64,000 nt of DNA from Styela clava (lineage: Eukaryota). How positions within the stretch are numbered: the stretch's first letter is position 1; each line of letters begins with the position of its first letter. The position numbers and the translations under genes are program-made. The DNA is taken from positions 11,532,001-11,596,000 of the forward strand of contig NC_135255.1 in the NCBI RefSeq assembly GCF_964204865.1. The letters are read 5' to 3'. The notes under the pieces are model-generated. The model was not told the origin of the DNA. It worked only from the letters and a program-made list of their open reading frames with translations, and made no database searches. This document shows, in pieces, positions 39,086 through 58,869 of this stretch.

Positions 39086-40063
39086 TCAATTTACAACTCT
39101 TTTGAATGGTCTAGCACCCGGAGTTCGCACTCTTGCGATTGGTTTCTGAGATTCTTTAGCAGAATTAGTCCGACTTCTAGGATTTGTATTTCCGATTCTT
39201 TTACCACTAGGTGGATGTGGAGATATTTTTCTTATAGGACTTTTAATACTTGGTAAATCTGCACGAGTAATTCGAGTATCTTTCTCCAACTGACGAATTT
39301 CTTGCTCAGAAAAACCAACATTTTTATCTGGAATTGGGCTTTCTGGTATAGAAGTAAAATAATCAAAATCATCTTTAAGTTTCACTTCTCCGTTACCTAT
39401 AGCAGTCGAAAATTTATGCAGCGATTCGGTTATTTCTGTGGTAAGTTTATCATAAAAAGCCGGTTTATTATGAGTGTCTTCATCAATATTTTTAGGTTTT
39501 TCATTTTGAGATTCCTCCTCATCGTCACTCAATTCTTCTTCGTCGTCACTCTCATCTTCATCCGAGCTGATGGAGCAATCAACCGATTTTTCATTGAGAA
39601 ATTTTAAATTTGGCAGTTTGTCACAGATGCTTCCAACATGATGAGATGCTTCTATACATCTATTTCCAGTCAAATTTAATATTATCAAACTATTTGGCAA
39701 TTGTTCAGTAACTAAATTTTCGATACAATTATCGCTTAAATCAAGAAATCCCAAATTTGCCAAGTCTTTTACTCCTTTCACTTCATTGATCCGATTCTCA
39801 GCCAGAGTTAAAAATCGCAAATTAATTAAAATGGAAAAGTTAACCATTTCCTGTATGTGATTACATTGTAAATAAAGATTGGTAATGCAAGGCAGAAAGT
39901 CCAGCAAAGGAACAGAAGTCAATCTTTCTCTATCTAATCTAACATGAGTAAGATCAGACAGCTTTTCAACTAATGCATCGACATCAGTGTCGTTTTCTAT
40001 TTTCAGAGTTTTCAAATTTCTTCGCACTACCAGGCCAACAATATCCAACGTATGATTTGACAT
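39086..40063 (-). CDS. LRRC46: Leucine-rich repeat protein 46, intronless, 325 aa
   Basis: VRLDRE..LYLQCNHI..LRFLTLAENRI..LDLSDNCIE..LPNSLIILNLTGN pattern followed by an acidic tract, as in LRRC46. Confidence 0.85.
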   Translation of the reverse strand: MSNHTLDIVGLVVRRNLKTLKIENDTDVDALVEKLSDLTHVRLDRERLTSVPLLDFLPCITNLYLQCNHIQEMVNFSILINLRFLTLAENRINEVKGVKDLANLGFLDLSDNCIENLVTEQLPNSLIILNLTGNRCIEASHHVGSICDKLPNLKFLNEKSVDCSISSDEDESDDEEELSDDEEESQNEKPKNIDEDTHNKPAFYDKLTTEITESLHKFSTAIGNGEVKLKDDFDYFTSIPESPIPDKNVGFSEQEIRQLEKDTRITRADLPSIKSPIRKISPHPPSGKRIGNTNPRSRTNSAKESQKPIARVRTPGARPFKRVVN

Positions 40064-40680
40064 TGTAGATTTTGATGTTCAATTATCATCCATTATAATG
40101 TCAAAGATATAAATCCTGTTCACAAAACATTTCAATCTTGAAAAATCTCATCTTCGTCAAATGTGTAGTATTTTAACTGAATCATTCTATTTTGTAATCT
40201 TAAACAATAGACACAAAAAATTAGACAACATAGCGCAAAATATACTGGTATATCATATCTGGTTCAATATTTTGATAGCTTTTGTTTGATCAAAAGTTTG
40301 GATTTATATTTCCAAAATACATTAAATCCCATTTATATGATACTAGAAACAACATTCGAATATGCTATTAAGTATACCGGTACATATGGCATATTTGTCT
40401 ATAAGAGAAACAAGACAAAAATGAGCCTAACTTACGAGGATAAATTTCACACTTGATACAACTAAAATCAAACAAAACTTGGTCATACATTGAAAAGAAT
40501 TGTAATACCAAAAATTGGAGGAACATTTTTGAAAAGGTTTGTTGTTCGTTTTAAATCCTTTTAATTACAATATAATCTTAATATAACAATATGAAATTCC
40601 TCAGTTCAGCATTAATAAGTTGGACCAGAGTTATACAAATATTTTCAGTCAACAAAAAAAATATATTTCAAGAGATTAGG

Positions 40681-40971
40681 CTAGCTTGATGGTGTCAAAA
40701 GTGAGCTAATTGTGTTTTCAACTTCTTTAGACGATTGGTTTGCCAGCGATGCACTATATTCCACTCCAAATGGATGACGAGCATAGACTTTCGGTTCTAT
40801 GTTGCTACATTCTCGGATAAGGATTGGGAAACCAGGATTTTCTTTCTTGATTGCGACATATCTATTCTCTACAAAATCTCGAACTCCTTGACTGGATGAT
40901 GACTTCTGACATAAATGTATTCGAAGTTCACGAATGTGCTTTGACAAATTAACAAGTTGCTTTGCCGCCAT
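40681..40971 (-). CDS. NDUFA2: NADH:ubiquinone oxidoreductase subunit A2 (CI-B8), intronless, 96 aa
   Basis: RELRIHLCQKSSSSQGVRDFVE..Y..IKKENPGFPILIRECS..EPKVYAR..FG.E. Confidence 0.97.
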   Translation of the reverse strand: MAAKQLVNLSKHIRELRIHLCQKSSSSQGVRDFVENRYVAIKKENPGFPILIRECSNIEPKVYARHPFGVEYSASLANQSSKEVENTISSLLTPSS

Positions 40972-41420: not shown

Positions 41421-42861
41421 GCGTTACCGTGCCGGTAGTGCTCTGACTCAAATCAAACTCCAAATAAATACTATATAATATATCTGAATAAATATATAAA
41501 TCTGACAAAAATATCTGAATATTCGAGAAAACATTTTGCGATACAGCTTTGTCTGAAAGAAAATATGCGAACGCTTTGCGCAAACTGATTCATGTGTGAA
41601 TGCAGTTTCTCGAGAACAGCATTTGCGAGAACAAATTTTCGCGTAAACGTATTTTTCAAAAATGTAATTTTGTGACAAAATATTGAAATCTCGGACAACC
41701 TACTTTTCCGAGACTGTAAATTTATGCAAACGAATTTTGCAGAATTGCAGTTCCGACATCGTGACACTGGACAGAAGTTTGTTCTCGCAAAGCTAGGTTC
41801 TCCACATCCTTTTTTTCGTGCATCATACAGTGAAAGAAGATCTCTGAATAAACTAGAAAAATAACCGAAAATAGAGATGAATTAACGATATATAGTATGA
41901 TCAAAATTTATCTAATAATTATCTTGCCTGCAGCAAACATCAATAACAAAACCAAGAAGCGTGTTGCAAATGTCGTGTTCAGAAATTTTACTTGAAACAA
42001 AATGCGATCAGAATTATTACATTCCAACTCTCTATATTCAATACGCCAGCTCATTAAATACCGTAGGAGATGAGATTTTAAAAAATTGGTAATTATAGAT
42101 ATTAAGAGAAAACGACACCTCTCCTGTTTCTACTAAAGTAGGATAGGACCTATCTCATTTGACTCTGAAATTTAATTTGAAAAAGTGGTGCGGGTGCGTG
42201 AGCATGACCATGTGCTTTAGCGGGAAGGTTTTGCCGATAAGAAATGATAAATGTTCGATATTCATTATGGAATTTATTATGTCTTATCTGTATGTAATGA
42301 TTTATATTATTATAAATAAAATTACATTTATTATAAAAAAATGGTATTGCAGCGTTACGGTACGGTATTGGTTATCTCCAAACAGTTAGGTACGGTACAG
42401 GTAGCATGTGTCGGCTGTCGCATTGTATTTCTGTACCGGTATTTTGGATATAAGATGCGATAGGTTAGGTACAACAGTACAATGCAAGGGTATATGACAT
42501 TTGAGTTGTGTTATAGAAAAAATCACGGTATCTTACTAGCATATTCATATATTTGAATATCATGATAATGGTACGGTACATTTTATAGTTTCAGCAGTTT
42601 TGTTCTGTATTTTCAAAGCATCCATTGGGTTTCACAATGCGATATAAACAGTAAGTCAGTAACACAGTAATAGCGTTTTATATTCACCCATTGTTTACAC
42701 TGTTATGACATTGAATTTGTGAAAATTCATTCAAAATAAATTTTTGAATTAAAAAACAATTGGAATATTTTTATGATCATATATATTTATATAGCTTCAA
42801 TACTTAAAATATATCGAAAATATAAAAAGTGAAACATTGCATACAGATATATGTTGTAGGT

Positions 42862-43305
42862 CGGGGGTCGGCAACCTTTTGTCGCTCGCGGGCCAAAATT
42901 AAAGGTTGCAAGTCATTGGTGGGCCGCACATATTTTTAGAAAGTTAATATCCGAACGGATAGCCGATTAATCACATTTTTCACACAGATCAAGAGTTAAA
43001 GTTTGAGCAGCGCACAAAGACTGATCATTTGAATATTTTCTGCGCCAATGAACCATTCGCACTCAGCATCAACTTTACTGCGTTTTGTTGCCATTTGTCT
43101 GATTATAATTAAATTGTAGGCTCATCAAACGAGTAATCGTGAATTATATATTTGTTAGGATATAATATAATTTAGTCTCAAAATAAATTATGTTAGGTAA
43201 AGAATATAATCGTCAAAACAGCTGTTTTGTTACTATAAATATAATTTAGTGAAGCGTCGCGGGCCGGATTATATTGCCTCGCGGGCCGTAGGTTGCCGAC
43301 CCCTG
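42862..43305. mobile_element. hAT-Charlie-type MITE
   Basis: TIRs CGGGGGTCGGCAACCT / AGGTTGCCGACCCCTG; TSD TTGTAGGT / TTGTAGGC (7/8, central TA); GCGGGCC subterminal motifs. Confidence 0.88.
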
Positions 43306-43723
43306 TTGTAGGCTATCTCATTCAATTCATTGATAGTAATGCTATGGCCATTTACTTTTTTCATATGTATTCAGTACTTCGGTCCTCGAGTGTAATGATT
43401 GAGAGAAATATTGTTTCTGTGGAAAAATAGGTTGGCATCATGTTATTAGTTATAATAAAACCCAACGAAAACATTTAAAACCTCAATAACTACTCGATCT
43501 TCGTTTAATAAGCTATAAATTAATCCACTGGTTTCCGTGTAGTTCACAAGTCAGGTACCGGTACTTGAATGTGAATCATGGGAAAATCTTTTACTACTGG
43601 AAAGTACATTAACCATCATACTGCCATAAGATGTGGCAAGGTTCAGTAACATGATTGCATGCTCATAAACTCTTTCACTCAGAAATAAGCTGAGTGATAA
43701 CAATTGTCAGTTTGTGTTGTTGC

Positions 43724-43902: not shown

Positions 43903-44175
43903 GTTGTTGCCTAATCTTGAATCTAGGTATTAATCTAATTTTGTGGATTTTTTAATTAATGCATTGCTATTGCTAATTAATTCGACTTTCATCTTGACAC
44001 CTGGCAGCATGATCACCACCAATCACAGAATCAACTGATCAATTTTTCAGTGAACAATTGAATAAATACCGAAAATTCCCGATTGTCTGCTTGTGTCTAT
44101 AATACTTTTTAATTCTGTCTCTATAAAAACAGTTTATAGTAAATTGATAGATGAATTTTCATAAGGACTGCCACC

Positions 44176-45333
44176 ATGAACAGTTTCTTCAAATTAGGGA
44201 GAAGGCTAACTAACTGTTCTCGTGAAATTAGTGTATTTTCAACCTCACAACCAAATGGAACAAATCATGCTTGGCATAAAGCCGTCTCAGAAGCTGAGAA
44301 AATTGTTGGATTTCCGACGTCTTTTCTAAGTTTAAGAGCTTTATTGAGTGACGAGTTTGGTGGACTTGCATTACACCTAAGAAAACTGATAAGCACCAAA
44401 CATCCTTTACTAAATACAGCAAGAGGCATCATGTTCGATTCTAAAAATTATTTACAAACAAGAGGATTGGTTGTGTTACTTATTTCAAAAGCAGCTGGAA
44501 TCACAGATATAGAAAGTGATTTTACCTCAACAGAGATTTACGAAAAACAACGTGCTTTGGCTGAAGTTACTGAACTAATTCATGTTGCATTCCTCGTCCA
44601 TAGAGGCATTGTGGATGTGAATCAGATTGTTGGGAATGTAAGTAAAACAGATATTGACTTTGGTAACAAACTTGCAGTATTAGGAGGTGATTTCTTACTT
44701 GCTAATGCATGTACTGGCTTAGCAAAACTGCAAAACACTCAAGTTGTAGATCTCATGTCAACATCGATTAAAGATATATCAAGTTCACTTGTAATTCTAC
44801 CAGAAAGTGATTCAGTTTGTGATGTCGAAATGCTTTCGGGACTTCCTATGAACGAAAATAGCTGGAAAGAGACAGTTCACCTTTCAGCTGGAAGTTTATT
44901 ATCGAATGCCTGTCGCTCAGCGATGTTGCTTGCATCGTCAGATGTTAAACTTCTCGAATCTGCGGAAAAGTTTGCGCATCATCTTGTACTCGCTCAACAA
45001 GCTCGACACGATTCTTTGAGATTTGATACATTAGAAGCCTTGGAACAAAAACCTAATTTTTGTTGCCTTTGTTCACTGCCTGTAGTATTACTAGCAGAAC
45101 AAAATGGTGGACTCGAATGGATAAAAAAATTTACTATTGATGAAGGTTTAAAGAATGTTAAAATAGATGTTGAAAAATTATTCCACACTGTAAAAAATGA
45201 TCCAAATGCTTTGCAACAATCACATAAATTGTGCGCAAATCATGTTGATAAGGCTTTAAATTATTTGCATGTATTTCCCCAAAGCGAGTCTAAGGATGCT
45301 TTAGTCAATATACTATTTTCTGTTAAGGAATAG
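44176..45333 (+). CDS. PDSS2: Polyprenyl (decaprenyl) diphosphate synthase subunit 2, intronless, 385 aa
   Basis: W..AVSEAEKIVGFPTSFLSLR.LLSDE, HPLL.TARG, RGLVVLLISKAAG, GNKLAVLGGDFLLANAC; HRGIV in place of DDxxD marks the non-catalytic subunit. GCCACCATG start. Confidence 0.96.
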   Translation: MNSFFKLGRRLTNCSREISVFSTSQPNGTNHAWHKAVSEAEKIVGFPTSFLSLRALLSDEFGGLALHLRKLISTKHPLLNTARGIMFDSKNYLQTRGLVVLLISKAAGITDIESDFTSTEIYEKQRALAEVTELIHVAFLVHRGIVDVNQIVGNVSKTDIDFGNKLAVLGGDFLLANACTGLAKLQNTQVVDLMSTSIKDISSSLVILPESDSVCDVEMLSGLPMNENSWKETVHLSAGSLLSNACRSAMLLASSDVKLLESAEKFAHHLVLAQQARHDSLRFDTLEALEQKPNFCCLCSLPVVLLAEQNGGLEWIKKFTIDEGLKNVKIDVEKLFHTVKNDPNALQQSHKLCANHVDKALNYLHVFPQSESKDALVNILFSVKE

Positions 45334-45363
45334 AATAAAACTGTATAGAATATAAGCATTGGT
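45334..45363 (+). promoter_or_regulatory. 30-bp PDSS2-COQ3 spacer: poly(A) signal followed by candidate trans-splice acceptor
   Basis: TAG-AATAAA(45334-45339)-ACTGTA-TAG(AG 45347-48)-AATATA-AG(45355-56)-CATTGGT-ATG; too short to hold a promoter. Confidence 0.55.
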
Positions 45364-46284
45364 ATGAAGCGATTGTTTGAATTATGTCATCGTTATTCCT
45401 TTCTTATACGGAAATCACACCAGACGATTGTGATAAGAAGCGATAATATTTTCACGACAATATGGCAAAATAATTCTGATTATCACCAAAACGAAAGTTC
45501 CACAAATGACACAAACACCCATGACCATGAAGAAACAAAAAAGTTTTCGGATTTATCTACCAATTGGTGGGATATAAACGGTCCAATGAGAGCACTGCAT
45601 TCAATGAATAAAGTACGAGTACCTTTCATAAGAGATTGTTTGATCTATGAAGGATATGGAAATGGAGAAATATATACAGACAAACCTTTGAAAGGTATTG
45701 ATATACTTGATGTTGGATGTGGCGGTGGTATTCTTACTGAGCCTTTAGCAAGATTAGGAGCCGACGTTGTAGGAATAGATGCATCAGAAGAACTGATTGA
45801 AATTGCGAAAAAACATAGGCTTCCAGAACTAGAAAACTTGCAATATCTCAATGCATTGGTGGAGGATATAGCTTTAGTGGGATCTTTAAAATTTGATGCT
45901 GTTGTGGCGTCAGAAGTTATCGAACATGTTTCAAATCCACATTCATTCATACAAACTTGCTCGAGTGTACTCAAACCAAAAGGGTCCATGGTGATCAGTA
46001 CTATAAATAAAACTTTACAATCATATCTTCTTGCCGTCAACTTCGCTGAGCGAGTTTTGCAAGTTGTACCCCGAGGTGCTCATGACTGGAATAAATTCAT
46101 AGCGCCAGAAGAAGTTATCGAATATTTAGATCATTGTGATTGCTCTTTTAGAAAAATTCATGGTATGCTATATAACCCGTTTTGTGATGATTGGTCGTTT
46201 GTTAGTAGTACCAATATGAATTATATTATTCATGCTGTTAAAAGACAAGATATTGACAATGACCAAGATAATGATATAGATTGA
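45364..46284 (+). CDS. COQ3: Ubiquinone biosynthesis O-methyltransferase, intronless, 306 aa
   Basis: WWD.NGP.RALHSMN.VRVPFIRD, ILDVGCGGGILTEPLARLGA, FDAVVASEVIEHV, STINKT, G.HDWNKFI.PEE. Confidence 0.97.
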   Translation: MKRLFELCHRYSFLIRKSHQTIVIRSDNIFTTIWQNNSDYHQNESSTNDTNTHDHEETKKFSDLSTNWWDINGPMRALHSMNKVRVPFIRDCLIYEGYGNGEIYTDKPLKGIDILDVGCGGGILTEPLARLGADVVGIDASEELIEIAKKHRLPELENLQYLNALVEDIALVGSLKFDAVVASEVIEHVSNPHSFIQTCSSVLKPKGSMVISTINKTLQSYLLAVNFAERVLQVVPRGAHDWNKFIAPEEVIEYLDHCDCSFRKIHGMLYNPFCDDWSFVSSTNMNYIIHAVKRQDIDNDQDNDID

Positions 46285-47656
46285 GTAAAATAAATTTCTT
46301 GGTCTTACAATAATGATTAATAATTCTGGTTTTTCGTTGTTCATTTTCTTTTATATCAAATGATTTGATATACTTTTGGTAAAAAATGGAAATGAATCGT
46401 ACACTATTTCATCACAGTGGAACCAAATGAGAGCTTGTCACATTTCAAGATTTTGGGAAATCACATTTTCGTAAATTATAGATCTATGCAGCCAAACCCA
46501 AAAAGGATGTGAAACATTCACTAAAACTAAAACAGGTAGAGCTTTAATACCCAGACCAAAAACATGGACCATGGTCCATAATGACAGAATCCCAAAAAGG
46601 CAATTTGTAAAAAATGTGATATAAGCTACTTTGGTTTTACAGTGGTGAATTTTTCTAATGTCTAACTTAATAAGGCCTAATTTTACTTCAAAGTTCAAAA
46701 TGGTATATTTCTGTGTACTACCTTCTATTAATAACAAGCTATGTAATGTTCTGAAATAGAGAATTCAGAGTTGATATACAAGCATGATTGTATGTAACAT
46801 ATCTGTTATTAAAAAGTAGAATCATAAAATTTTATTTTCGCATTCACAAATACTCAATATTCTTTGGCTTAATCTGCATCTTGAACAAAATGTCATGGCA
46901 TCCAATTTCTATTGTTTTTTACAGATAATTATCACCACCTTATTAATAGTTTATATACTATTGTGAATATATGCTTCTATAGTAGGAAGAATTTTTATCA
47001 TTTCAAAGAAGATCAACCTCATACATATTCAGCCAGAATTCAAAGGATTGTATCTTGATAATTCAGTTGTATCGAAGTAGACTCTTATCAGCCAAGAAAA
47101 AAACGTATGACTTTTTTGACTGATCCAATTTTGGCAGAAACAAAATCAGAAATTTTATCTATTAACTCTACACTCCTACATAGATGCTGATAGAAAAGGC
47201 CGATAGAAATCATATTTTAGTAAATGACTATAATCATGGGTTGAAATACAGTCATTCTGGGACAATTTTAAGACCCCGATGGATGCCATAATATAAGCGT
47301 CCGTTCAGTCGAGGGCAATCAATAAACTGATTTAGTCACTTAGACTCATTTTTTTCAAAAACCATCTCAACTCAATTTAAAGAATGATTCAATAGGGTGG
47401 TTTGACCACACAGATGAAGTCCTACTCAGTATCTCAACTTGAGTGGTAGCAAAATGATATCTATTCCAGTTAATTAAGATAGGTAAAATGTTACCCTAAG
47501 AAGCATATGTTATCCTTTCATAAGATATTTATCCAACCAATATGAAATGATTTTTCTCGGTAAAGATTGAGAAATCATGTTTGTAAAGTAGACTGTGTTT
47601 TTATTTCAGTACTTGAGTGTCAAATCCTGATTGCGTTTACTCAGTGTTATTGAAAA

Positions 47657-48547
47657 ATGTTGCGATCTTGGATAGGACTCTTAGGTAGGCCTAAGGTGAT
47701 CACATCTCAACTGTTGAAAAAGTCAAGATACTTATCAACGGCAGCAAATGATGAACTTGTTGTCCAACAACTTGATGGTGATGACGAAGGAATTGTTGTT
47801 CTCGGTTTAAATCGACCTAAAGCAAAGAATTCATTCAGCAAAAGTTTGAGTCAAAAACTGACTCAAGCGATCGAGGACTTACAGTACGAGGAAAAATTGA
47901 GAGTGCTTATCATTAGAAGCATGATCCCTGGCATATTCTGCGCTGGAGCTGATTTAAAAGAGAGGGCGACAATGCCACAAAGTGAAGTTGGTCCATTTGT
48001 ATCTCGTCTTCGAAGATTATTATTCGACATGCAGAACTTTGCAACACCAACCATTGCTGCAATAGATGGCGCTGCTCTCGGAGGTGGTTTAGAAATGAGC
48101 TTAGGATTCGACATGCGTATTGCTTCTAATAATGCTTCATTGGGTCTTGTGGAGACCAAACTTGCTATCATTCCAGGAGCTGGTGGAACGCAAAATCTCA
48201 CACGACTTATCGGAGCGAGTATGGCAAAGGAAATGATTTTTACAGGAAGAGTCGTAAAGGGAGAAGAAGCAAAAACCCTTGGTATTGTGAATCATGTTGT
48301 CAAGCAAAATGAAAACGGTGATGCTGCGTACTTGAAATCCCTTGATTTAGCTCGTGAAATTCTTCCTCAAGGACCAGTAGCATTGCGTATGGCAAAACGA
48401 GCAATAAATTGTGGCTCGGAAATAGATATTTCTAATGCACTTGCCTTTGAGCAAGCTTGTTATGCACAAGTGATCCCAACCAAAGACAGAATTGAAGGGC
48501 TCACAGCGTTTAGAGAAAAAAGGAAGCCAAAATATACAGGAAGTTAA
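47657..48547 (+). CDS. AUH: Methylglutaconyl-CoA hydratase (AU-binding crotonase family), intronless, 296 aa
   Basis: GIVVLGLNRPKAKNS, IRS..PGIFCAGADLKERA, PTIAAIDG.ALGGGLE, LVETKLAIIPGAGGTQ, NENGDAAY, EQACYAQVIPTKDRIEGL.AF.EKRKP.Y; upstream acceptor TTTATTTCAG (AG 47608-09). Confidence 0.93.
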   Translation: MLRSWIGLLGRPKVITSQLLKKSRYLSTAANDELVVQQLDGDDEGIVVLGLNRPKAKNSFSKSLSQKLTQAIEDLQYEEKLRVLIIRSMIPGIFCAGADLKERATMPQSEVGPFVSRLRRLLFDMQNFATPTIAAIDGAALGGGLEMSLGFDMRIASNNASLGLVETKLAIIPGAGGTQNLTRLIGASMAKEMIFTGRVVKGEEAKTLGIVNHVVKQNENGDAAYLKSLDLAREILPQGPVALRMAKRAINCGSEIDISNALAFEQACYAQVIPTKDRIEGLTAFREKRKPKYTGS

Positions 48548-49667
48548 AAAATTCTCGTAATCACCACATTTATTATTTTATTTAATTATTCGATCAATAT
48601 CCTATTGTTTGATTGCCATGCATGTGCCATAGGTGTGCATTCCACCACACTTTGCCAGCAGCAAGTTTTGACTTGTTACTCTTACTTTTTGCCAAACCAT
48701 TCTAGTCTAAAATCATTATTAGATTAATGTTGTACTTGATGCTGAAAACATGCAATTCGCCATAATAGGAGTCCTCACATTGAAAGTTCATTGTAATCAT
48801 GTCATTTTTATTACCCCTCGTTTTTGAAGCGCATTTGACTGAAATTGTTATCTCAAGCATAGACTTCTATTGTTGACATTTTGACTCCAGCCCAGTAAAA
48901 TTCCAAGGTATTCACCAGCTGTATTTTGTTAAGATTGTCTTAATTAAGAAATCTTACTTACTTCATGCTTTATGATTTTCTTTTAGAAATTTTACTTTGA
49001 TTATCACTGTTTAACTGAAGGTTTAAGCTTCAGACTCTCAATTCCGTAGAATTAAAAATTTCAACTCCAACTGACATGAATAAAATCTTGCACTATCTGA
49101 CTCCACAGTCGACCACATATTGAATTAGAAAAGTCCTGATACCGGGGACAATTTTTGTGTTAAAATTTTGAGATAGATTTTATATGAATCTTGTTAGAAG
49201 TGGAATGGTTCTGCTATCCTAATTTATTGTTTTGAAGCATAGATTATGTGTATTAGAGGTGAAGTTTGTACTGTCAAATTTCATTCCATTTGAGTATATA
49301 TTTTTTTTCTGATTGCTCATGACAAAATGAAAATCGTGACACTTTGTTGAAAACTAGGTATGCGTTTGTCAGAAATTACTGTTGTCATAATAAATATTAT
49401 TATTATTGGCAAACTAGTTTCCGCCTTTGAAAAATTATTTTGAATATTTATTCAATTTTAAAGCTTGAGCATTACTAAATCAATATTTAATAAATAATGA
49501 TATGTACTAAATCATTATGTAACCATGTGTTTTCTATATGATGCTGTGAATTTAAATATTATATTATTTACAAATTCGAACAATATTTTTAAATGACTGA
49601 GAAAAATTGATAATTTTGGTTGATTAATTTACTCATCTTAAATTATTCTCTATGATTTAGCAGAATT

Positions 49668-50894
49668 ATGTGGCGCCTAGTTTACCGTTTAAAAATAAGC
49701 AAAAGTGAAAATTATTTGGGCAGAGTTCTACCTTCTGGATCAGGTGTTTTACAATCAGTAAATCAAGATAGATATTATCATGGAAATAGGAAATTCATGA
49801 AAGTGAGATCAAAGCATAAATCAAGGAATCTTTTTGCACCCGTGGAAAACGTTCACGCCGTTCGCAGGGGTGAAAGATTCAATAGAAGATACACTGATAA
49901 ATATGGAGTCAGATCTGATAAATTTGTCCCACCTCATAAATTACCTGCCCCACGCTGGAATTGGGATTATGACTTGACCAAAAAATCTGCATCAACATTG
50001 CACGGTGTTCACTCTGATAATGTTGTTAAATTCAATCAAGATATTGTAGATAATAACCCACTCAAAGATAAACAATGGGAATTGGGAACGTGGGAACCCT
50101 GGTCGAAAAGATGTGGTGCTGTTGGGATTAAGCTAGGCGTACAATACATGTGGCTAAAAAATGGTACCTGTGTTTCTTCAACGCTCATTCAAATATTAGA
50201 TTGTCATGTTATTAAATATTTTTCAAAAGAAGAATACAATGGAAGAATTGCTGCTGCACTTATTGGTGCAAAAAATGCTAGTCCATTCTACAGAGGAGAG
50301 AAATATCACCAATTCTGTTTAGACGCTGGTGTACCAGTCAAGGAAAAATGTTTTCGCTTTCTCATTACTGAAAATGCCCGTCTAAAACCAGGAACACCTA
50401 TTTATGCAACTCATTTTAGAGTTGGCCAAAGTGTAGATCTTTTAGCTAAGTCTATTGGTTATGGTTTTGCGGGAGTTATGCAACGTTGGCATATGAAAGG
50501 AGGCCCTGCGTCACATGGAGCTACAAAATGGCATAGAAGAATAGGATCACTTGCAGATCGTTCTGGACGCGTTGTGAAAGGCAGGAGAATGCCAGGGCAA
50601 CTTGGTGGCACATATGAAACAGCGTATGGTCGAAGAATTTTCAGAATCAACACAAGATATAATGTTCTTTATGTGAAAGGAAGAATCCCAGGGCATATTA
50701 ATACATTTGTTAAAATTTCGGACACTTGTAATAAAAAATTACAACCTCGAAATGAAGATGAAGTGTTAAAACATATTGGTCCATTTCCAACTTATCAACC
50801 TGAATTAGTTGATGAAGAATTACCAGAAAACATTTATGATGATTCTGTTTTTGATTTTGATAATCCATCTATCGTGTTAAGGGAAGATTCTTGA
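49668..50894 (+). CDS. MRPL3: Mitochondrial ribosomal protein uL3m, intronless, 408 aa
   Basis: R.G.VGIKLG, DCHVIKY, KPGTPIYATHFRVGQ.VD..AKSIGYGFAGVMQRW.MKGGPASHGATKWHRRIG, KG.RMPG, RINT.YNVLYVKG.IPGH, PFPTY; upstream TAG/CAG acceptor 49659-49663. Confidence 0.95.
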   Translation: MWRLVYRLKISKSENYLGRVLPSGSGVLQSVNQDRYYHGNRKFMKVRSKHKSRNLFAPVENVHAVRRGERFNRRYTDKYGVRSDKFVPPHKLPAPRWNWDYDLTKKSASTLHGVHSDNVVKFNQDIVDNNPLKDKQWELGTWEPWSKRCGAVGIKLGVQYMWLKNGTCVSSTLIQILDCHVIKYFSKEEYNGRIAAALIGAKNASPFYRGEKYHQFCLDAGVPVKEKCFRFLITENARLKPGTPIYATHFRVGQSVDLLAKSIGYGFAGVMQRWHMKGGPASHGATKWHRRIGSLADRSGRVVKGRRMPGQLGGTYETAYGRRIFRINTRYNVLYVKGRIPGHINTFVKISDTCNKKLQPRNEDEVLKHIGPFPTYQPELVDEELPENIYDDSVFDFDNPSIVLREDS

Positions 50895-51549
50895 TTGTGA
50901 TTTATTTGCTTTATTATCGATATCACAGAAAAATTGAATCGCTTTTACTTGGTAATTTTTGGTAAAAAAGTTTTATCCCCCTGATAAGATTTTTCTGTAA
51001 TGTTATACAAATTTATCTTCGAAGAATTTGATGTTGCGAACAGTAGAAAGTAATTTTCAAAATTGCATTTAAATTTGATCACTTCATTTCAAATTTGAAA
51101 AAAGCAAATAATTCGAGTATGCGACTCATTTTCCCATCATAAGTAGCAATTTGTAATAAAAATCATAAGCTGTTTTGTGTAATGGTACGCTTCTCTTTTT
51201 TTGGCCTAATGTTATATTTAAAAATCGTACATTGAATTGTATAGCTCAATCGCTTGACAGACAAGGTCCAAACGTTTTGATAAATATTATTGTGGGCATG
51301 TGATTCGTAATTTTAACCTATAACTTTTTATAAGATAGGGGCCCAATTCAATTTTAACACTATCAAAATCTATTTCAAAAACATTTAAAACTCTAAAATT
51401 CAAATTTGTCGCTCCCAGTTTTGCAGTGAGACTTATTAACAATGATTAGGCATTACCATAAAACAATCATCTTGTGAATGACAATAATTTTGCGTCGCTT
51501 CATTTTTCTTTTCAAACTTTGAACCTTTTTTGTATTTCAGCTCTGCATC

Positions 51550-54500
51550 ATGTCAGTAATCATAGAAACAACGATAGGTGATATTACTGTTGACTTATTT
51601 CTTAAAGAGCGTCCCCGAACTTGCCTCAATTTTCTGAAACTATGCAAAACAAAATATTATAACTACTGCGTATTTCATTCTGTACAAAGGAATTTTGTTG
51701 CACAGACTGGAGATCCAACAGGTACAGAATATTAATAGCAAAGGTTTGCTACCAGGCTTATAGTACCGTAATATGTGTCGTGCACAATTGGTAAAAAGCA
51801 GTGGAATTGCCTAAACTATATCCGGTAGTTTGCTTCTTAACAGTTATGCATGTATCACAAGATATGTTGATGATTTCTCTGTTATTGTTTGTTTCCCCTC
51901 ATCTGTTATTTTACATTTATATATTAAGAATAAGGGCTGTTGTATTGAAGTAAGCCTAGTTTCACTGGATACACATTTTCAAATTTTTTAAGAGTCGAAA
52001 ATCTGAATTCGTCGGAATTGCAGGCTTTCAGAGGTGCTAGAATAAATCAAACTTCCAAGCTTGCATACGCCAAAGTTTTTGTTAAAATATTTGGCTCTGC
52101 TAAGAATGCTGTTTTACGATTTGAATTGTATCATTATTGATTAGAATACCTGTACTTCCTGAATGAAAGTGATGTGGTAGCCACGTTTACGATCTAAAAA
52201 ATAAATGTGTCATATTTTCAAAATATTTGCAGGTGCTGGTAGAGGAGGAGAATCTATATTTCAGTCACTTTATGGAGATCAAGCAAGATATTTTGATGCT
52301 GAAGTAACTCCCAAGATAAAACACCGAAATATTGGTATGAAGTAGACAATATAAATAAACAAAGTTAATTCGTTGGAATATGATTTTTTGTTAATAATTG
52401 ATTGATGTTAGGGAAAAAATTTTCTAATTAGTTATTTAAAATCCATTTCATTTTTAAAGAGTAACGGCATAAATACTTTGTATTGCAGGTACAATTTCAA
52501 TGGTCAATGATGGAAATGGACAACACGGTTCACAGTTTCTAATAACTCTTGGTGAAAATCTGGATTATTTAGATGGTGTCCATACTGTGTTTGGAGAAGT
52601 TGCTGAAGGTAGATATGACAAGCAATAAAGTATATCAGAATTTACTTTTCATTCGAAAATGTCTTTCTAAGTATTTTTTATTTTATGATAGACCAAAAAT
52701 TAGTTGGGGAACATTTGACAGAATAATGTTTATCTAAATTAGTATGAATTAATAAATTTAGTTTCTACGTATTCACAATTGTCTTGAAGAATTTTGTTTG
52801 TGGAACAGACCCATTTTATAATTGAAAAGAATATTTTGGAATGTATTCGGAATACTAAATTATTCTGCCCGACTTGTTTCTAGAATTTGATGTAATGGGT
52901 GTTTTCCAGTTTTAGAAGCTTCAAGCAAACTTTTCATTATATAATAACGTAATTATTGTAAGATTATGAATAATGTTTGTTACCTTGTTTTTATACAGGA
53001 TTTGATGTTTTAACTAAACTAAATGAAGCATTTTGTGACAAAGAAAATCGTCCCTATAAAGATATACGAATCACACATACAGTTATATTAGACGATCCGC
53101 TGGATGACCCGCCTGGTAATGATTTATTGCATCGCTACTATTGATTTTACTACACCCCTAATTCATTATAAATACTAATAAACGTATCATTTTTGATAGA
53201 AAATATGGTACCTAAATGAAAGTTTTATTTACGAAATTATAACTTTCTCAAATCATCCGCTTCTCAATTTTATAGACAAAAAATTTTGTTTCAATTTCAA
53301 AGGGATTTTGTTGAAATTTATATTAAATATAAGATTAATAAGTAATAGGGACGTCTGAATTCTCTCACATATAATTAGATATCAGTGGCTGCTTGTACAG
53401 TGCCTTGTTCAGAGTGGAAGGCAGAATAGGTATCGTATAATAAAATTCATGCAGTCAAGTCCTACATTTTGGTGTGAGGGCATAAATTTTTTTAATAATT
53501 TTTATTTTGAATTGAATTGTTTATTGTTATCTACACTTAACTACAACCTCATAGTAGCCTAGTGGTTTTTAATCAGGGACCTGTGAGTTTACTTTCCAAT
53601 CCGAGAGACTATATTATTACATATGTATATTGTTTCAATATACCAAATCAAACACATGGTATAATATAATCTTATAATAAGTGTTTTACTAGTGTTCACT
53701 GGCATATTTTATGTTAACGAAGATAACATATCGATCGTATCATATAATATATGTATAATCAGTTGCAGAGGGGTTACTTGAGCCTCTGGAGTCGTGAATT
53801 TTTATTGGGGTTTCGCTTCACCAAAATAGTTGAAAACCACTGCCAACCAGTTACAGTGTTCGTAAAGTTTCTTGGATTGAGAAAAAGTTTTTATTTTTAA
53901 TTTTCTCACAGGTTTGATTATTCCTGATCGTTCCCCTGAGCCGACGAAAGAACAACTTGAGAGTTTGTTGAGGATCGGAGCAGATGAAGAAATTGATGAT
54001 ACAAAAGGATTGACTGAAGGGGAATTAGCGGAACGCGAGGGAAAAGTTGAGGCAGAACATCAAGCACAGGTCACAAGAACTATTTTATTTCCATCATGTT
54101 TATGATAGAAATTTCAGTATCGAGGAAGGATATTAAGACAGTTCCTGTCGTCACAATCACATATTCGCGTGTAGTTGGTATTGGAACAGCTGGCTTGTTA
54201 TTTTTCCTCATGCGCAGTCTCTAAATTATATGAACATAGAAAAAAATGACATCCATGCAAGTACTTGGTTAGGCAACATTCAACATTGTAGAATTTGCTT
54301 TATCTGTAACGTAGAAATGGTATCGTCAATTCTAAATTACTTCACTAAGGACTAATTTTTATGCCCTCCCTTATCCAAAATAAAATATGTTTCTGATGTT
54401 TTGATATTTTTGTATTTTTGAAGGTTTTAGAAATCATAGGAGATTTACCAGACAAAGATGTCAAACCTCCAGATAATGTTTTATTTATTTGTAAACTCAA

Positions 54501-56550
54501 TCCTGTTACAACAGATGAAGATTTAGAAATAATATTCTCAAGGTATAATATTCAGCAATAGTGAACTATCTTTTCAAATTAAAGAAAAAAACAATCCCAT
54601 GAATATTCCTGTGAAAATATCTGTTGACTCTTTTCAAAGTAAAAGTTTTTAGTATAAAATTAGGCAGTGTTACATGGAGTTATAAATTTTTTAATCCAAA
54701 AGGTGACTGGCGACACCAATCAATTTTTATAGCTGTAATGGTTGCCTTTGGCATCATGGACTACTATTGTGTTCTTAAATTTAATTAACGATATTCCCAT
54801 GCATTAGACTATTTTATAGGTTATTTATTAAGTTTAATTCTTTAATCTACTATAGCTCACATGTGTGGCTCCTCCAGAGGTTCTGCAAGTTTACACTCAA
54901 ATCCGAGAGTCGATATGAATATTGTTTAAAAATGTAATCAAATGCCCATTATCTTTGCCGCCATTATCAAACTTTTGAGACCATCTTATTACGCTTGCTC
55001 GTACATTTCTACTTACAGCCTTGCAAGTTTTGGCCATGAAAACCACTGGCCAGAGCCTCATTCAAAGTTTGCAAATTCTTTTATCCACTGTGTTCTGTTT
55101 TGATATGATCATTATACCGATTAAATCTTTACGGTAATCTGTTTTTAGATTTGGTAAAATTCTGTCTTGTGAAATAATAAGAGATTTCAAGACAAGTGAA
55201 TCACTACAATATGCTTTTATTGAATTCGACAAACCTGATGAATGTGAGAAAGCTTACCTGAAAATGGATAATGTATTAATTGACGATCGAAGAATCCATG
55301 TCGATTTCAGTCAGTCAGTTTCAAAGATACAATACAGAAGAAGTGTAAGTTTTATTCATCACATATTTAACGAAACCAACACTTTTGTGACCAGGGGTGT
55401 GGATTCTAAGTGAAAACTTCATACTTTTACTGGTGATCACAAAACGCATTTCTTTTGTATCATACATACAACCTTCGTAGCTTGAGGCACTTTTTGGAGA
55501 CCCTCAACGGCCTCAAGACTCATCATGAAAACCATGATTTCCGGCCTCTGGCATGACCCCCTAGCTCTTACTCGGCAATCAGCAATTTTGGAACCCCCAT
55601 TTGAAAATTCATGATCAAGTTCACTAAGCGATTTTAAGGGTCTATTAAGGAAAGGTTGCATAAGCCAAAGTTTTTGTCACAAAAATTTGAGCTGGAGTCT
55701 TTAAGTCGAACATTTTTACGCCGGGAGTCGTGAGTAGGAATCAATTTTTCTTAATTGTGAATTAATTTTTTTAATTTCAATTATGAATTTTCCTGGATTC
55801 CGCAGCCCTGTTCGTAACAAGATTATTTCATTTCATGCCAATCAAAAATCATGCAGTACTTCTGAACCCTACATTATTTATTGTCATATACTCAAAGAAG
55901 ATTATGTATAGTTTATGGAGTATGATATGTGATCATTTCTTTCTAGGCTATTTATAATGCACAAGGTAAAACCTTTATTAATGTGAACTGTCTGTAAGTA
56001 CTTGCCTGATATTTATATGTCCTCGGTAGCCAGTTTAGTTGATTACCCAGAAATACATTGGGCTGTTGTTTCTTCATAAGTACCTTTGAAACTGGATTTG
56101 CAATTGTATGTCAGGCCCAAAAAGATGCATTGCCAAAATAACACATTATCTTAATAATAACCTCAAATATTGTTTTAGAATGATCCAAAACTTGACACAA
56201 ATGCAAAGAGAGATAAGGTATCGCATGAAAATTCATCACCAGAGCGAAAACACAAAAAGGAACATAAGAAAAGAGAACGAATTGAAAAGCAACGTGGACA
56301 AAATAAAAACTATAGATCGGATGGAAGTTCTGATAATGAAGTTCGATGCGGAAAGCATCGCAAACGGCGATCACATAGTCCACATACAAAATCATCCAAG
56401 TCTGTGAAGAAACATACCAGGTCACCTTCACCCAGAAAGAGTGAAAAACATTCAAAATATGAAAAAGATAATTATTCAAGACATCGGCATGATGATTCAG
56501 GTTATAAAAAGTCAAAACATAGGAAAAAGCACAGCAGCAAATACGATTGA
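51550..56550 (+). CDS. PPIL4: Cyclophilin-RRM protein PPIL4, 8 exons, about 451 aa
   Basis: Exons 51550-51721, 52233-52334, 52489-52608, 52999-53115, 53912-54069, 54424-54542, 55149-55344, 56179-56550. [72 protein letters not shown]-rich tail. Confidence 0.96.
55392..55810. mobile_element. Old hAT-like MITE in a PPIL4 intron
   Basis: Ends CAGGGGTGTGGATTC / GATTCCGCAGCCCTG; flanks TTTGTGAC and TTCGTAAC (6/8). Confidence 0.5.
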
Positions 56551-57604: not shown

Positions 57605-58869
57605 TTATCTATCGAATCTCGCAAGTCTTCTCCTGCGAAGTTCTTCTTGATGCGAGTCTTCTGACTGAATATTCCACCCATAAGGTGGAGCAGTTGATTC
57701 AAAATGATCAGGTGGGGCTGTTGGATGCACATACCCAGGACCGTCTAAATCTGGATATATCCGGTTGTGTCCAGTTCGCATGCTTTCCTCCATTGCTTTT
57801 CTAATTTGTTCACTCTCATCCATACCACCTGTATATCTGTCATAGTCATTATCATCGGCCCCACGTGTTGTCCCTGAATGATACCTGTATGTAGGCTGGC
57901 GACTCCTATTTGATATCATACGAAATGGACTAACTGGCAGTTCCATGATCCATTTCAATGGTCCTTTTACATATGCAAGTCCAACAAGAATACCAGCAAG
58001 ATGGCCAGTAAATGAGGCATTGGGTACAATTAACTGAATCAGTACCAGCTCAAACCAGCATGCATATCTAGAATTAACTGGAATGAAACCCATGAGTCGT
58101 TCCGTGCCAGTTGGCGCCATGTAAGTAGTGACAACTTTGACAGCAAAAACTACTCCAGAAAATCCAATAGCACATTGATGAAGATATGACATGTCGCTAA
58201 GAAGATATGCCAACGCATAATTCAAATAGAGCAATATCAAATTTGTACATATAGTAAATACTCCGATCATGTATAAAAACCAAGCAGAACCAACAATGCG
58301 TTCCAAGTATAATCCTTTATATAAAAATGATATCATGTTGAAATACAAATGCCAGTCATCACCATGGAAAAATGCACCTTTCAGCAGTCTAGAATAGTCA
58401 CGAGCATACCAGACTTCTCTCACACTGATACAAACACTTTGCCATGTGAAATCTGGTATGTACATCAAATGAATGATAACATTTAGTGCAACGGTTGCGA
58501 GAGTTGTTGGAGGAATTCTGAATGAGAAAGAAGGTATTTTAGCCAATAAAAAAAATATTATTCTTTTAAATAATTTCACTAAGTATAGAAAATTACAAAT
58601 ATGGAGGATGTAATTTCCAATATTTAGCTTATGCTGTAAATATTATATTATGTCCAGTCGAGAAATTGACATATATTCAAAGAAAGAGGTATAATATCAC
58701 CAGGCAAACTAATATCTGGATATTCTCCAATAAACATGTCGCCAAGTTTGAAAAGACAATTATTATGTAAAAACAGTATTTATTACCTGTCCATTCCAAT
58801 TTGAAATAACTGGAAAATCAATAGTAACACGCCCATTTGAGAACGTCCATGTGATCTTCTACCAAACAT
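57605..58869 (-). CDS. RHBDD1: Rhomboid protease RHBDL4, 2 coding exons
   Basis: Exon 1 58869-58787 (MFGRRSHGRSQMGVLLLIFQLFQIGMD), exon 2 58517-57605. HGDDWHLYFNM, catalytic GFSG and GHLAG, UIM-like EQIRKAMEES, C-terminal p97-binding ELRRRRLARF. Confidence 0.95.

What the first reader, a model, noticed from the sequence alone, without database searches (positions are those of the whole stretch)
44176..56550. Five-gene plus-strand operon candidate PDSS2-COQ3-AUH-MRPL3-PPIL4 enriched for mitochondrial functions
Seen: five same-strand genes with gaps of 30, 1372, 1120 and 655 bp. Each ATG has a nearby acceptor-like AG (44164-65, 45347-56, 47608-09, 49659-63, 51539-40) and I found no upstream coding exon for any. 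The first four encode mitochondrial proteins: CoQ tail, CoQ methylation, leucine-to-HMG-CoA catabolism (AUH also binds RNA) and the mitoribosome. Inference: a polycistronic mitochondrial biogenesis unit driven from the 41-44 kb interval.
Basis: partly seen in the sequence, partly recalled or inferred. Interest (0 to 1): 0.75.

Follow-up and report, generated by a model that had tools for sequence, protein, structure and literature searches.

The report
Tunicate mitochondrial gene cluster, partly operon
Five real same-strand genes of a sea-squirt relative, four of them mitochondrial, sit in a row, but only the first two (two ubiquinone-synthesis genes 30 bases apart) look like a true operon of the kind already known in tunicates, and the rest probably have their own starts.

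Summary
The five genes exist as described: PDSS2-like, COQ3, AUH, mitoribosomal uL3m (all intronless) and a multi-exon PPIL4. The host is a tunicate. One RNA-like contig joins the last 21 letters of a published chordate spliced leader (SL) to an AG at 44131-32, 43 nt before the PDSS2 ATG.

PDSS2-COQ3 fits the known Ciona-type operon. The CDS gap is 30 bp, AATAAA directly follows the stop, and one contig bridges both genes in 3 of 3 RNA-like runs.

The rest does not fit a single polycistron:
- AUH has an upstream non-coding exon cis-spliced (47104 to 47610, GT..AG) into its acceptor.
- One run has no RNA over 46351-46750.
- RNA contigs after the AUH stop run to about 49600, 60 nt from the MRPL3 acceptors, so AUH-MRPL3 co-transcription stays open.
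- MRPL3-PPIL4 has no RNA data.
- Known tunicate operons have spacers under 100 bp, and about half of Ciona genes are SL-spliced singly.

Verdict: partly supported, ordinary, a new member of a known kind. The scan's first-reader notes already flagged the PDSS2-COQ3 pair here and other candidate operons elsewhere in this genome.

The parts
44131..44132 (+). SL trans-splice acceptor AG used for PDSS2; the exon starts at 44133, giving a 43-nt 5' UTR
   Evidence: table 7: the X9 contig has 21 loose letters before 44131. These letters are the 3' part of the 25-nt 'Chordata 1' SL in Table 1 of PMC3795323. The SL's final AG overlaps the genomic AG. The 21-mer is absent from the window.
44176..45333 (+). 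PDSS2-like CDS (385 aa, intronless): the non-catalytic subunit type of decaprenyl-diphosphate synthase
   Evidence: both DDxxD motifs replaced; named PDSS2 relatives.
45334..45363 (+). 30-bp PDSS2-COQ3 boundary: AATAAA at 45334-39 directly after the stop, and candidate acceptors AG at 45347-48 and 45355-56
   Evidence: Sequence. One contig bridges the boundary in each of X1, X3 and X9 (table 8). No SL-joined contig was seen here.
45364..46284 (+). COQ3 CDS (306 aa, intronless)
46290..46295 (+). AATAAA 6 nt after the COQ3 stop: candidate proximal poly(A) signal
   Evidence: Sequence. The X9 contig ends at 46299, and X3 has no depth from 46351.
46403..46659 (.). Dispersed repeat of about 250 bp in the COQ3-AUH spacer
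   Evidence: 39 further places at 70-80% identity among 40 scored of 94 candidates. No Pfam, Rfam or tRNA hit.
46891..47104 (+). Upstream non-coding exon of AUH (5' limit approximate), ending at a GT donor at 47105
   Evidence: joint 47104 to 47610, GT..AG, in X1. Contigs X3 46891-47145 and X9 46924-47225.
47105..47609 (+). Intron or outron part, ending in the AUH acceptor AG at 47608-09
   Evidence: the joint; X1 contig starts at 47610 and X9 contig at 47600. Strong pyrimidine tract.
47657..48547 (+). AUH (methylglutaconyl-CoA hydratase) CDS (296 aa, intronless)
48548..49602 (+). RNA-covered stretch after the AUH stop. It is read as a long AUH 3' UTR, with AATAAA at 49079, 49389 and 49489, or partly as the MRPL3 outron.
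   Evidence: table 8: X3 contig 48014-49364 and 49342-49601; X1 contigs tile 48216-49395 and 49466-49602; X9 48911-49546. Sequence. The spacer is unique in the genome.
49659..49663 (+). Candidate MRPL3 acceptors (AG 49659-60 and 49662-63)
   Evidence: Sequence. No RNA contig shows their use: the listed RNA contigs start at 49675 and 49689 with adapter letters.
49668..50894 (+). MRPL3 / uL3m CDS (408 aa, intronless)
51539..51540 (+). Candidate PPIL4 acceptor AG, 9 nt before the ATG
   Evidence: Sequence. It is the best-scoring of the five. There is no RNA data.
51550..56550 (+). PPIL4 gene, multi-exon. Exon-bearing open frames lie near 51550-51721, 52232-52339, 52494-52610, 52998-53117, 53914-54075, 54427-54546, 55150-55330 and 56179-56550. 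Splice sites were not fixed and the exons were not joined.
   Evidence: cyclophilin; RRM.

Best explanation
This is a housekeeping gene cluster in a tunicate that uses spliced-leader (SL) trans-splicing. It is not one transcription unit.

1. PDSS2 and COQ3 form a Ciona-type dicistronic operon. One primary transcript is made. PDSS2 receives the SL at 44132/44133. The PDSS2 3' end (AATAAA at 45334) and the COQ3 5' end are made within the same 30 bp. COQ3 trans-splicing at 45348 or 45356 is inferred, not shown.

2. AUH starts a new unit. Transcription begins near 46.8-46.9 kb. The roughly 0.7-kb leader (first exon to 47104 plus an intron) is either cis-spliced or, for most mRNAs, replaced by the SL at 47609/47610. 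The SL step is inferred.

3. AUH mRNA carries a 0.5-1.05 kb 3' UTR that ends 60-250 nt before the MRPL3 acceptors. MRPL3 may therefore be co-transcribed with AUH (about even odds) or start from a compact promoter there.

4. How PPIL4 is linked is unknown.

The mitochondrial theme reflects clustering of broadly expressed intronless genes, not a dedicated regulon.
For: SL use in this organism and at PDSS2:
- An X9 contig joins 21 SL letters to AG 44131-32.
- The string equals the published chordate SL, is absent from the window, and is encoded elsewhere in the genome.

PDSS2-COQ3:
- The gap is 30 bp, with AATAAA abutting the stop.
- One contig bridges the boundary in 3 of 3 RNA-like runs from 3 studies (records 1, 17, 25).
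- X1 and X3 have zero depth in the 43951-44150 bin, just upstream of the acceptor. X9 has 5.73 there, from the contig that starts at 44131. DNA run X10 has 56. DNA carry-over is therefore unlikely.
- Ciona operons are defined by under 100 bp and abutting genes, and are rich in single-exon genes.

Break before AUH:
- GT..AG joint 47104 to 47610 in X1, and an X1 contig starting exactly at 47610.
- X3 has zero depth over 46351-46750, yet has contigs at 46891-47270.
- In Ciona, single trans-spliced genes have a first exon plus intron (outron) of median 458 bp upstream of the acceptor.

AUH to MRPL3:
- RNA contigs tile from the AUH CDS to 49601/49602 in X1 and X3, and to 49546 in X9.

Spacers:
- They are mostly unique DNA, not recent insertions.
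Against: - X1 and X9 have no empty 200-nt bin anywhere between COQ3 and AUH. Read-through from COQ3 into AUH is therefore not excluded.
- The cis-spliced joint rests on one contig of low depth (4.8) with 30 letters on its shorter side, in 1 of 3 runs.
- Contigs cannot show RNA starts, ends or strand, and the tool warns that a hole proves nothing.
- The RNA nature of X1, X3 and X9 is the tool's guess. I infer it from uneven coverage, the SL junction, the spliced joint and the run sizes.
- No SL-joined contig was seen for COQ3, AUH or MRPL3.
- 48 further contig pieces were not shown.
- There is no RNA evidence at all for 49951-56550.
Confidence: 0.6

Rival explanations
1. All five genes are cistrons of one polycistronic pre-mRNA that starts in the 41-44 kb interval and is resolved by SL trans-splicing at each near-ATG acceptor. 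This would be a 'loose' operon with intercistronic spacers of 0.65-1.4 kb between coding sequences, possibly with internal promoters added (a hybrid operon).
For: - Same strand, and four consecutive intronless genes.
- SL trans-splicing is shown at the first gene.
- RNA is present in every 200-nt bin between COQ3 and AUH in X1 and X9, and nearly all the way from AUH to MRPL3 in 3 of 3 runs. The stretch just upstream of PDSS2 is empty in X1 and X3.
- Ciona operons reach 6-7 genes and are rich in single-exon genes.
Against: - X3 has no RNA over 46351-46750.
- AUH has its own upstream exon spliced into the same acceptor.
- Described tunicate operons have spacers under 100 bp, mostly 0-1 bp.
- Near-ATG acceptors are expected for single trans-spliced genes and are near chance by sequence alone.
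- There is no data for PPIL4.
Confidence: 0.13
2. There are two operons: PDSS2-COQ3 and AUH-MRPL3(-PPIL4). They are separated by the AUH promoter and outron. In the second operon the upstream 3' UTRs run up to the next gene's acceptor, as in Ciona.
For: - RNA contigs run from the AUH CDS to 49601/49602, about 60 nt before the MRPL3 acceptors.
- At the mRNA level this meets the under-100-bp working definition used for Ciona.
- The AUH-MRPL3 and MRPL3-PPIL4 spacers are unique sequence.
Against: - Three AATAAA signals (49079, 49389, 49489) suggest that many AUH mRNAs end 150-580 nt before MRPL3.
- No listed RNA contig covers 49603-49674.
- An AATAAA at 51155 would end MRPL3 about 355 nt before the PPIL4 acceptor.
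- There are no reads for the MRPL3-PPIL4 spacer.
Confidence: 0.3
3. There is no operon at all. All five genes are independent units, and the contigs bridging PDSS2-COQ3 are read-through or overlapping UTRs of two separately initiated genes, with the COQ3 promoter inside the PDSS2 CDS.
For: - Contigs across two genes do not prove a single transcript (the tool's own caveat).
- No SL-COQ3 junction was seen.
- The two COQ3 acceptor candidates have weak pyrimidine tracts.
Against: - A 30-bp gap with the poly(A) signal in it leaves no room for a promoter outside the PDSS2 CDS.
- Bridging RNA is seen in 3 of 3 runs.
- This anatomy is exactly that of validated Ciona operons.
Confidence: 0.07

Closest known systems
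Ciona intestinalis SL-resolved operons (Satou et al. 2006, PMC1488885; Satou et al. 2008, PMC2760879; passages read)
   Same: - Tunicate host with a single SL used for both operon and single genes.
- Same-strand genes abutted, with the upstream 3' end and the downstream acceptor within a few bases.
- Mostly two genes per operon.
- Enriched in single-exon genes.
- PDSS2-COQ3 matches all of these.
   Different: - This host uses a different, longer SL: the 25-nt 'Chordata 1' consensus, not Ciona's 16-nt leader.
- A canonical AATAAA sits at the boundary.
- The other three boundaries have CDS gaps of 0.65-1.4 kb, outside the Ciona definition.
Oikopleura dioica operons (as summarised in PMC1488885 and PMC7986045; passages read)
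   Same: Short intercistronic spacers of 23-31 nt, close to the 30-bp PDSS2-COQ3 gap. One SL serves both single and operon genes.
   Different: The genome is much more compact, and operons are much larger and more numerous. No kilobase spacers are described.
Single (non-operon) trans-spliced Ciona genes with an outron made of a first exon and first intron (PMC11155486; passages read)
   Same: The AUH layout matches: an upstream non-coding exon, a 505-nt intron, and a first acceptor that can take either the exon or (inferred) the SL. The leader of about 0.7 kb compares with a median of 458 bp.
   Different: The AUH leader starts only tens of bases after RNA-covered sequence downstream of COQ3, so read-through input cannot be excluded.
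Caenorhabditis elegans operons, including SL1-type operons without spacers (mentioned in PMC1488885; the enrichment of mitochondrial genes in nematode operons is recalled, no paper seen)
   Same: Polycistronic units resolved by SL trans-splicing, with housekeeping and mitochondrial genes over-represented (recalled). The spacer is about 100 nt.
   Different: A separate evolutionary lineage. A dedicated SL2 serves downstream genes, and there is no such specialisation in tunicates.

Membership tests
Tunicate SL-resolved operon (Ciona working definition) | The host performs SL trans-splicing | tested here: met
   An X9 contig joins the published chordate SL to AG 44131-32. The SL is encoded elsewhere in the genome next to a GT donor.
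Tunicate SL-resolved operon (Ciona working definition) | Same-strand neighbours under 100 bp apart at the mRNA level: PDSS2-COQ3 | tested here: met
   30 bp between the CDSs, holding AATAAA and two AGs.
Tunicate SL-resolved operon (Ciona working definition) | Same-strand neighbours under 100 bp apart at the mRNA level: COQ3-AUH | tested here: not met
   The AUH acceptor lies 1.3 kb after the COQ3 stop. An AUH upstream exon and a 505-nt intron lie in between, and X3 has no RNA over 46351-46750.
Tunicate SL-resolved operon (Ciona working definition) | Same-strand neighbours under 100 bp apart at the mRNA level: AUH-MRPL3 | tested here: inconclusive
   RNA contigs reach 49601/49602, about 60 nt from the acceptors at 49659-63. 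Contigs cannot show true 3' ends, and three earlier AATAAA signals exist.
Tunicate SL-resolved operon (Ciona working definition) | Same-strand neighbours under 100 bp apart at the mRNA level: MRPL3-PPIL4 | not tested
   The single read-laying run covered 43951-49950 only. The CDS gap is 655 bp, with AATAAA at 51155.
Tunicate SL-resolved operon (Ciona working definition) | The downstream cistron is SL trans-spliced | tested here: inconclusive
   No SL-joined contig was seen at COQ3, AUH or MRPL3. Short SL tips are easily lost from contigs, and raw reads were not available.
Tunicate SL-resolved operon (Ciona working definition) | Unresolved precursor RNA spans the cistron boundary | tested here: met
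   For PDSS2-COQ3, one contig crosses 45334-45363 with far more than 31 letters on each side in X1, X3 and X9 (records 1, 17, 25).
PDSS2 (non-catalytic subunit of decaprenyl-diphosphate synthase) | Polyprenyl synthase fold with degenerate aspartate-rich motifs; orthology to named PDSS2 proteins | tested here: met
   PF00348. Both DDxxD positions of 3apz are replaced. Among the 120 proteins listed, those that carry a functional name are called PDSS2 or decaprenyl-diphosphate synthase subunit 2, except one row labelled as a zinc transporter; many rows are unnamed, 'hypothetical' or 'uncharacterized'.
AUH (methylglutaconyl-CoA hydratase) | Closer to AUH than to other crotonase-fold hydratases | tested here: met
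   1hzd E 3.8e-107 (361 bits), against 216 bits for the next hit.

The most novel reading that the evidence does not exclude
This tunicate may have 'loose' operons. A single primary transcript from upstream of PDSS2 would run through spacers of 0.65-1.4 kb and be resolved by SL trans-splicing into five mRNAs. That would couple ubiquinone synthesis, leucine catabolism and mitoribosome supply in one mitochondrial biogenesis unit. It might be an ancestral tight operon of intronless genes whose spacers later expanded and acquired internal starts. The evidence does not exclude this: RNA is present across the whole COQ3-AUH spacer in 2 of 3 runs and across nearly the whole AUH-MRPL3 spacer in 3 of 3 runs.
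Probability: 0.12. Interest if true: 0.6.

Novelty: new member of a known kind. Interest (0 to 1): 0.3.

Why it matters
- If PDSS2-COQ3 is confirmed as an operon, it would be a clear chordate case of two steps of one pathway (ubiquinone tail synthesis and ring O-methylation) sharing one promoter. Eukaryotic operons rarely group functionally related genes.
- The cluster is also a convenient test locus for a broader question: do tunicates outside Ciona and Oikopleura keep strictly abutted operons, or do they tolerate long spacers?
- As it stands, the five-gene 'mitochondrial operon' is mostly an ordinary run of trans-spliced housekeeping genes.
- A rough estimate, from recalled figures and no tool: if about 6-8% of genes are mitochondrial and genes were placed independently, about 0.2-0.6 runs of four would be expected per roughly 15,000-gene genome. 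The theme alone is therefore not significant.

Tried and rejected
- **SL versus cis exon or repeat.** I first asked whether the 21 loose letters at 44131 were a cis exon or a repeat.
  - They are absent from the window.
  - They occur 548 times in the genome, mostly inside LTR pairs.
  - I rejected 'LTR insertion next to PDSS2'. In every LTR copy the SL is followed by at least 160 nt more of LTR, whereas in the contig it is followed directly by window sequence at a genomic AG.
- **SL relics** in front of the intronless genes, as a sign of a retrogene origin: no hit better than chance (3 matches against 5.9 expected, none in 41-57 kb).
- **Spacers as recent transposon insertions**: rejected. 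Only about 250 bp of the COQ3-AUH spacer is repeat, and the other two spacers are unique.
- **Hidden genes or RNAs in the spacers**:
  - No Rfam hit at E up to 0.1.
  - No tRNA.
  - No Pfam hit for the 98-aa minus-strand frame at 46438-46734.
- **Rfam** on five SL-bearing loci: nothing.
- **Fold of a candidate SL RNA**: unremarkable, z -1.34.
- **Species name**: not obtained.
  - The paper that lists the SL names its seven chordate species only in a supplementary table.
  - Paper searches for stolidobranch SLs gave nothing useful (listings only).
  - That the SL belongs to stolidobranch ascidians is my recollection only.
- **Print searches** (listings only):
  - PDSS2 / COQ3 / operon / trans-splicing: 0 papers held at least three of the four terms.
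  - SL plus LTR retrotransposon plus tunicate: 4 papers, none on this topic by title or abstract.
  - I did not build or search a joined PPIL4 model.
  - The large representative-protein search, structure prediction and the atlas were not used, because the family scans left no protein open.


Full report
**What is there.**
- The window is a GC-poor (about 34%) stretch of a 377-Mb eukaryotic genome.
- Four are uninterrupted open frames of 385, 306, 296 and 408 aa. The fifth is a multi-exon gene.
- PDSS2:
  - It has a polyprenyl synthase domain.
  - Both aspartate-rich motifs of the catalytic enzymes are replaced in the alignment to 3apz.
  - Its best named relatives are 'decaprenyl-diphosphate synthase subunit 2 / PDSS2' of Phallusia, Ciona, Clavelina and vertebrates at 42-47% identity.
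- COQ3 matches the UbiG/COQ3 O-methyltransferase at E 2.2e-49.
- AUH matches human AUH (1hzd) at E 3.8e-107, well ahead of any other hydratase.
- MRPL3 matches uL3m at E 6.7e-84.
- PPIL4 has a cyclophilin first exon, an RRM exon and a basic tail ending at 56550. I searched its exons apart and did not join them.
- In-frame stops just upstream of the PDSS2, COQ3, AUH and PPIL4 ATGs and basic N-terminal extensions fit complete, mitochondrially targeted proteins. Targeting is inferred. For MRPL3 I found no such stop between the candidate acceptors and the ATG.
- The run is bounded by a divergent NDUFA2-type gene on the minus strand (40681-40971) and by a convergent rhomboid gene (57605-58579).

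**What organism, and is there a spliced leader.**
- One sequencing-run search gave nine transcriptome-sized runs from three studies that hold 54-61% of the sampled words, and four genome-sized runs that hold 83-94%.
- I laid X1, X3 and X9 (one per study) and the DNA run X10 on 43951-49950.
- The tool only guesses that X1, X3 and X9 are RNA. I infer that they are, for four reasons:
  - Their coverage is uneven while X10 is flat.
  - X1 and X3 have zero depth in the bin just upstream of PDSS2, where X10 has 56.
  - One contig carries a GT..AG joint.
  - One contig carries an SL.
- The X9 contig that starts at 44131 is preceded by 21 letters that lie nowhere in the window.
- Those letters are the 3' part of the 25-nt 'Chordata 1' spliced-leader consensus in Table 1 of PMC3795323 (passages read).
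- The SL's final AG coincides with the genomic AG at 44131-32, so PDSS2 mRNA is trans-spliced there, 43 nt before its ATG.
- The host is therefore a tunicate, and not Ciona, whose leader is a different 16-mer.
- In the genome the SL occurs in seven dispersed, near-identical units. Each has a conserved upstream region, a GT donor right after the SL and a T-run about 125 nt downstream. These are candidate SL RNA genes.
- The SL also occurs in hundreds of LTR copies (see the last section).

**The first pair.**
- The PDSS2 stop is followed at once by AATAAA (45334-39). Two AGs follow (45347-48, 45355-56) and then the COQ3 ATG at 45364.
- In each of the three RNA-like runs, one contig crosses this boundary with hundreds of letters on each side (records 1, 17, 25).
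- This is the anatomy of validated Ciona operons: abutted genes, bridging precursor RNA, and an excess of single-exon genes. The spacer length is close to that of Oikopleura operons.
- I did not see an SL-COQ3 junction. Contigs tend to lose such short tips, so that step is inferred.
- I put the PDSS2-COQ3 operon at about 85%.

**The other three boundaries.**
- Sequence alone says little. A near-ATG acceptor-like AG is matched by 60%, 42%, 11%, 11% and 3% of 5000 random positions for the five genes in order.
- In Ciona about half of all genes are SL-spliced as single units, with outrons of median 458 bp.
- COQ3 to AUH, evidence for a break:
  - X1 has a joint from 47104 to 47610 (GT..AG, 505 nt skipped) and a contig that begins exactly at 47610.
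  - X3 and X9 have contigs from 46891 and 46924 over the upstream exon.
  - X3 has zero depth over 46351-46750.
- COQ3 to AUH, evidence against a break:
  - X1 and X9 have RNA in every 200-nt bin of the spacer.
  - The joint is one low-depth contig in one run.
  - Contigs cannot show RNA starts.
- AUH to MRPL3:
  - RNA contigs tile from inside the AUH CDS to 49601/49602 (X1, X3) or 49546 (X9).
  - That leaves about 60-115 nt to the MRPL3 acceptors at 49659-63.
  - Three AATAAA signals lie at 49079, 49389 and 49489.
  - At the mRNA level this pair could therefore meet the under-100-bp criterion, or the last stretch could be an MRPL3 outron. I leave it at about even odds.
An AATAAA at 51155 would leave about 355 nt to the PPIL4 acceptor.
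- The spacers are mostly unique DNA and hold no recognisable RNA gene or protein domain.

**Comparison with the known, and novelty.**
- Tunicate operons are well described. In Ciona, 1,310 candidate operons hold about 20% of genes, and spacers have a median of 1 bp. In Oikopleura the median is about 31 bp.
- PDSS2-COQ3 is a new member of that kind, in a tunicate with a different SL. Its distinguishing feature is that the two genes belong to one pathway.
- A search of the held papers found none that holds at least three of the terms PDSS2, COQ3, operon and trans-splicing.
- The five-gene 'mitochondrial operon' is not supported as one unit.
- Its most novel surviving form, a loose operon with kilobase spacers, I rate at about 12%.
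- The scan's first-reader notes already list the PDSS2-COQ3 pair and the run of intronless genes on this window, and two other candidate operons elsewhere in this genome. I tested only the first of these.

**Seen in passing.**
- The SL 21-mer has 548 genomic matches at up to one mismatch.
- In 3 of 3 pairs examined it lies inside the 717-754-bp LTRs of young LTR retrotransposons. The LTRs of a pair are 99-100% identical, have TG..CA ends, and a polypurine tract precedes the 3' LTR.
- The SL sits about 160-180 nt before the LTR's 3' end.
- Two variants differ by nine letters ending in an acceptor-like 'cag' between the SL and the same downstream sequence. This looks like SL capture by reverse transcription of trans-spliced element RNA.
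- I only observed this and built no consensus.

Noticed in passing
G000 loci L005-L012 (for example L006/L005, L008/L007, L010/L009); not in the window: The host spliced-leader sequence is embedded in the LTRs of a young LTR retrotransposon family.
- The 21-mer has 548 genomic matches at up to 1 mismatch.
- In 3 of 3 pairs checked, the LTRs are 717-754 bp and the two LTRs of a pair are 99-100% identical.
- The SL lies about 160-180 nt before the LTR's 3' end.
- Two variants differ by 9 letters ending in 'cag', as if two trans-splice acceptors had been captured by reverse transcription.
- A paper search (listing only) showed nothing on this.
   Followed up: partly
G000 loci L013-L019 (7 dispersed places): Seven near-identical units are candidate SL RNA genes. 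Each has about 90 nt of conserved upstream sequence, the SL, a GT donor and a T-run about 125 nt downstream. There was no Rfam match and the fold was unremarkable.
   Followed up: partly
window 39086-40971, minus strand: Two further intronless open frames lie divergent to PDSS2: an NDUFA2-type protein (CI-B8 domain, 40681-40971) and an LRR protein (39086-40063), 617 bp apart. This is a fifth mitochondrial gene next to the cluster, and it extends the run of intronless genes.
   Followed up: partly
window 42852-43312: A high-copy dispersed repeat of about 450 bp lies in the interval upstream of PDSS2. The first look found 4559 candidates in the genome, and 39 of the 40 scored were full-length copies at 82-87% identity.
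   Followed up: no
window 46403-46659: A dispersed repeat of about 250 bp (70-80% identity to other copies; 94 candidates) lies in the COQ3-AUH spacer. RNA contigs of X1 and X9 cover it, so COQ3 may have a long 3' UTR isoform that runs through it.
   Followed up: partly
window 45366: In the DNA run X10, one contig matches from 45366 onward (2 nt into the COQ3 ATG) but is preceded by 131 unrelated letters. The assembly holds no second copy of 45200-45500. It may be a haplotype variant or a short shared word.
   Followed up: no
window 47414-47452 and many single sites in 44.4-49.5 kb: The RNA-like runs differ from the assembly by a 39-nt deletion in the AUH leader intron (X9) and by many transitions (contigs 95-99% alike). 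DNA run X10 is nearly identical to the assembly. The population is highly polymorphic.
   Followed up: no
window 57605-58579, minus strand: An intronless 324-aa rhomboid-domain open frame lies convergent to PPIL4 and closes the same-strand run.
   Followed up: no
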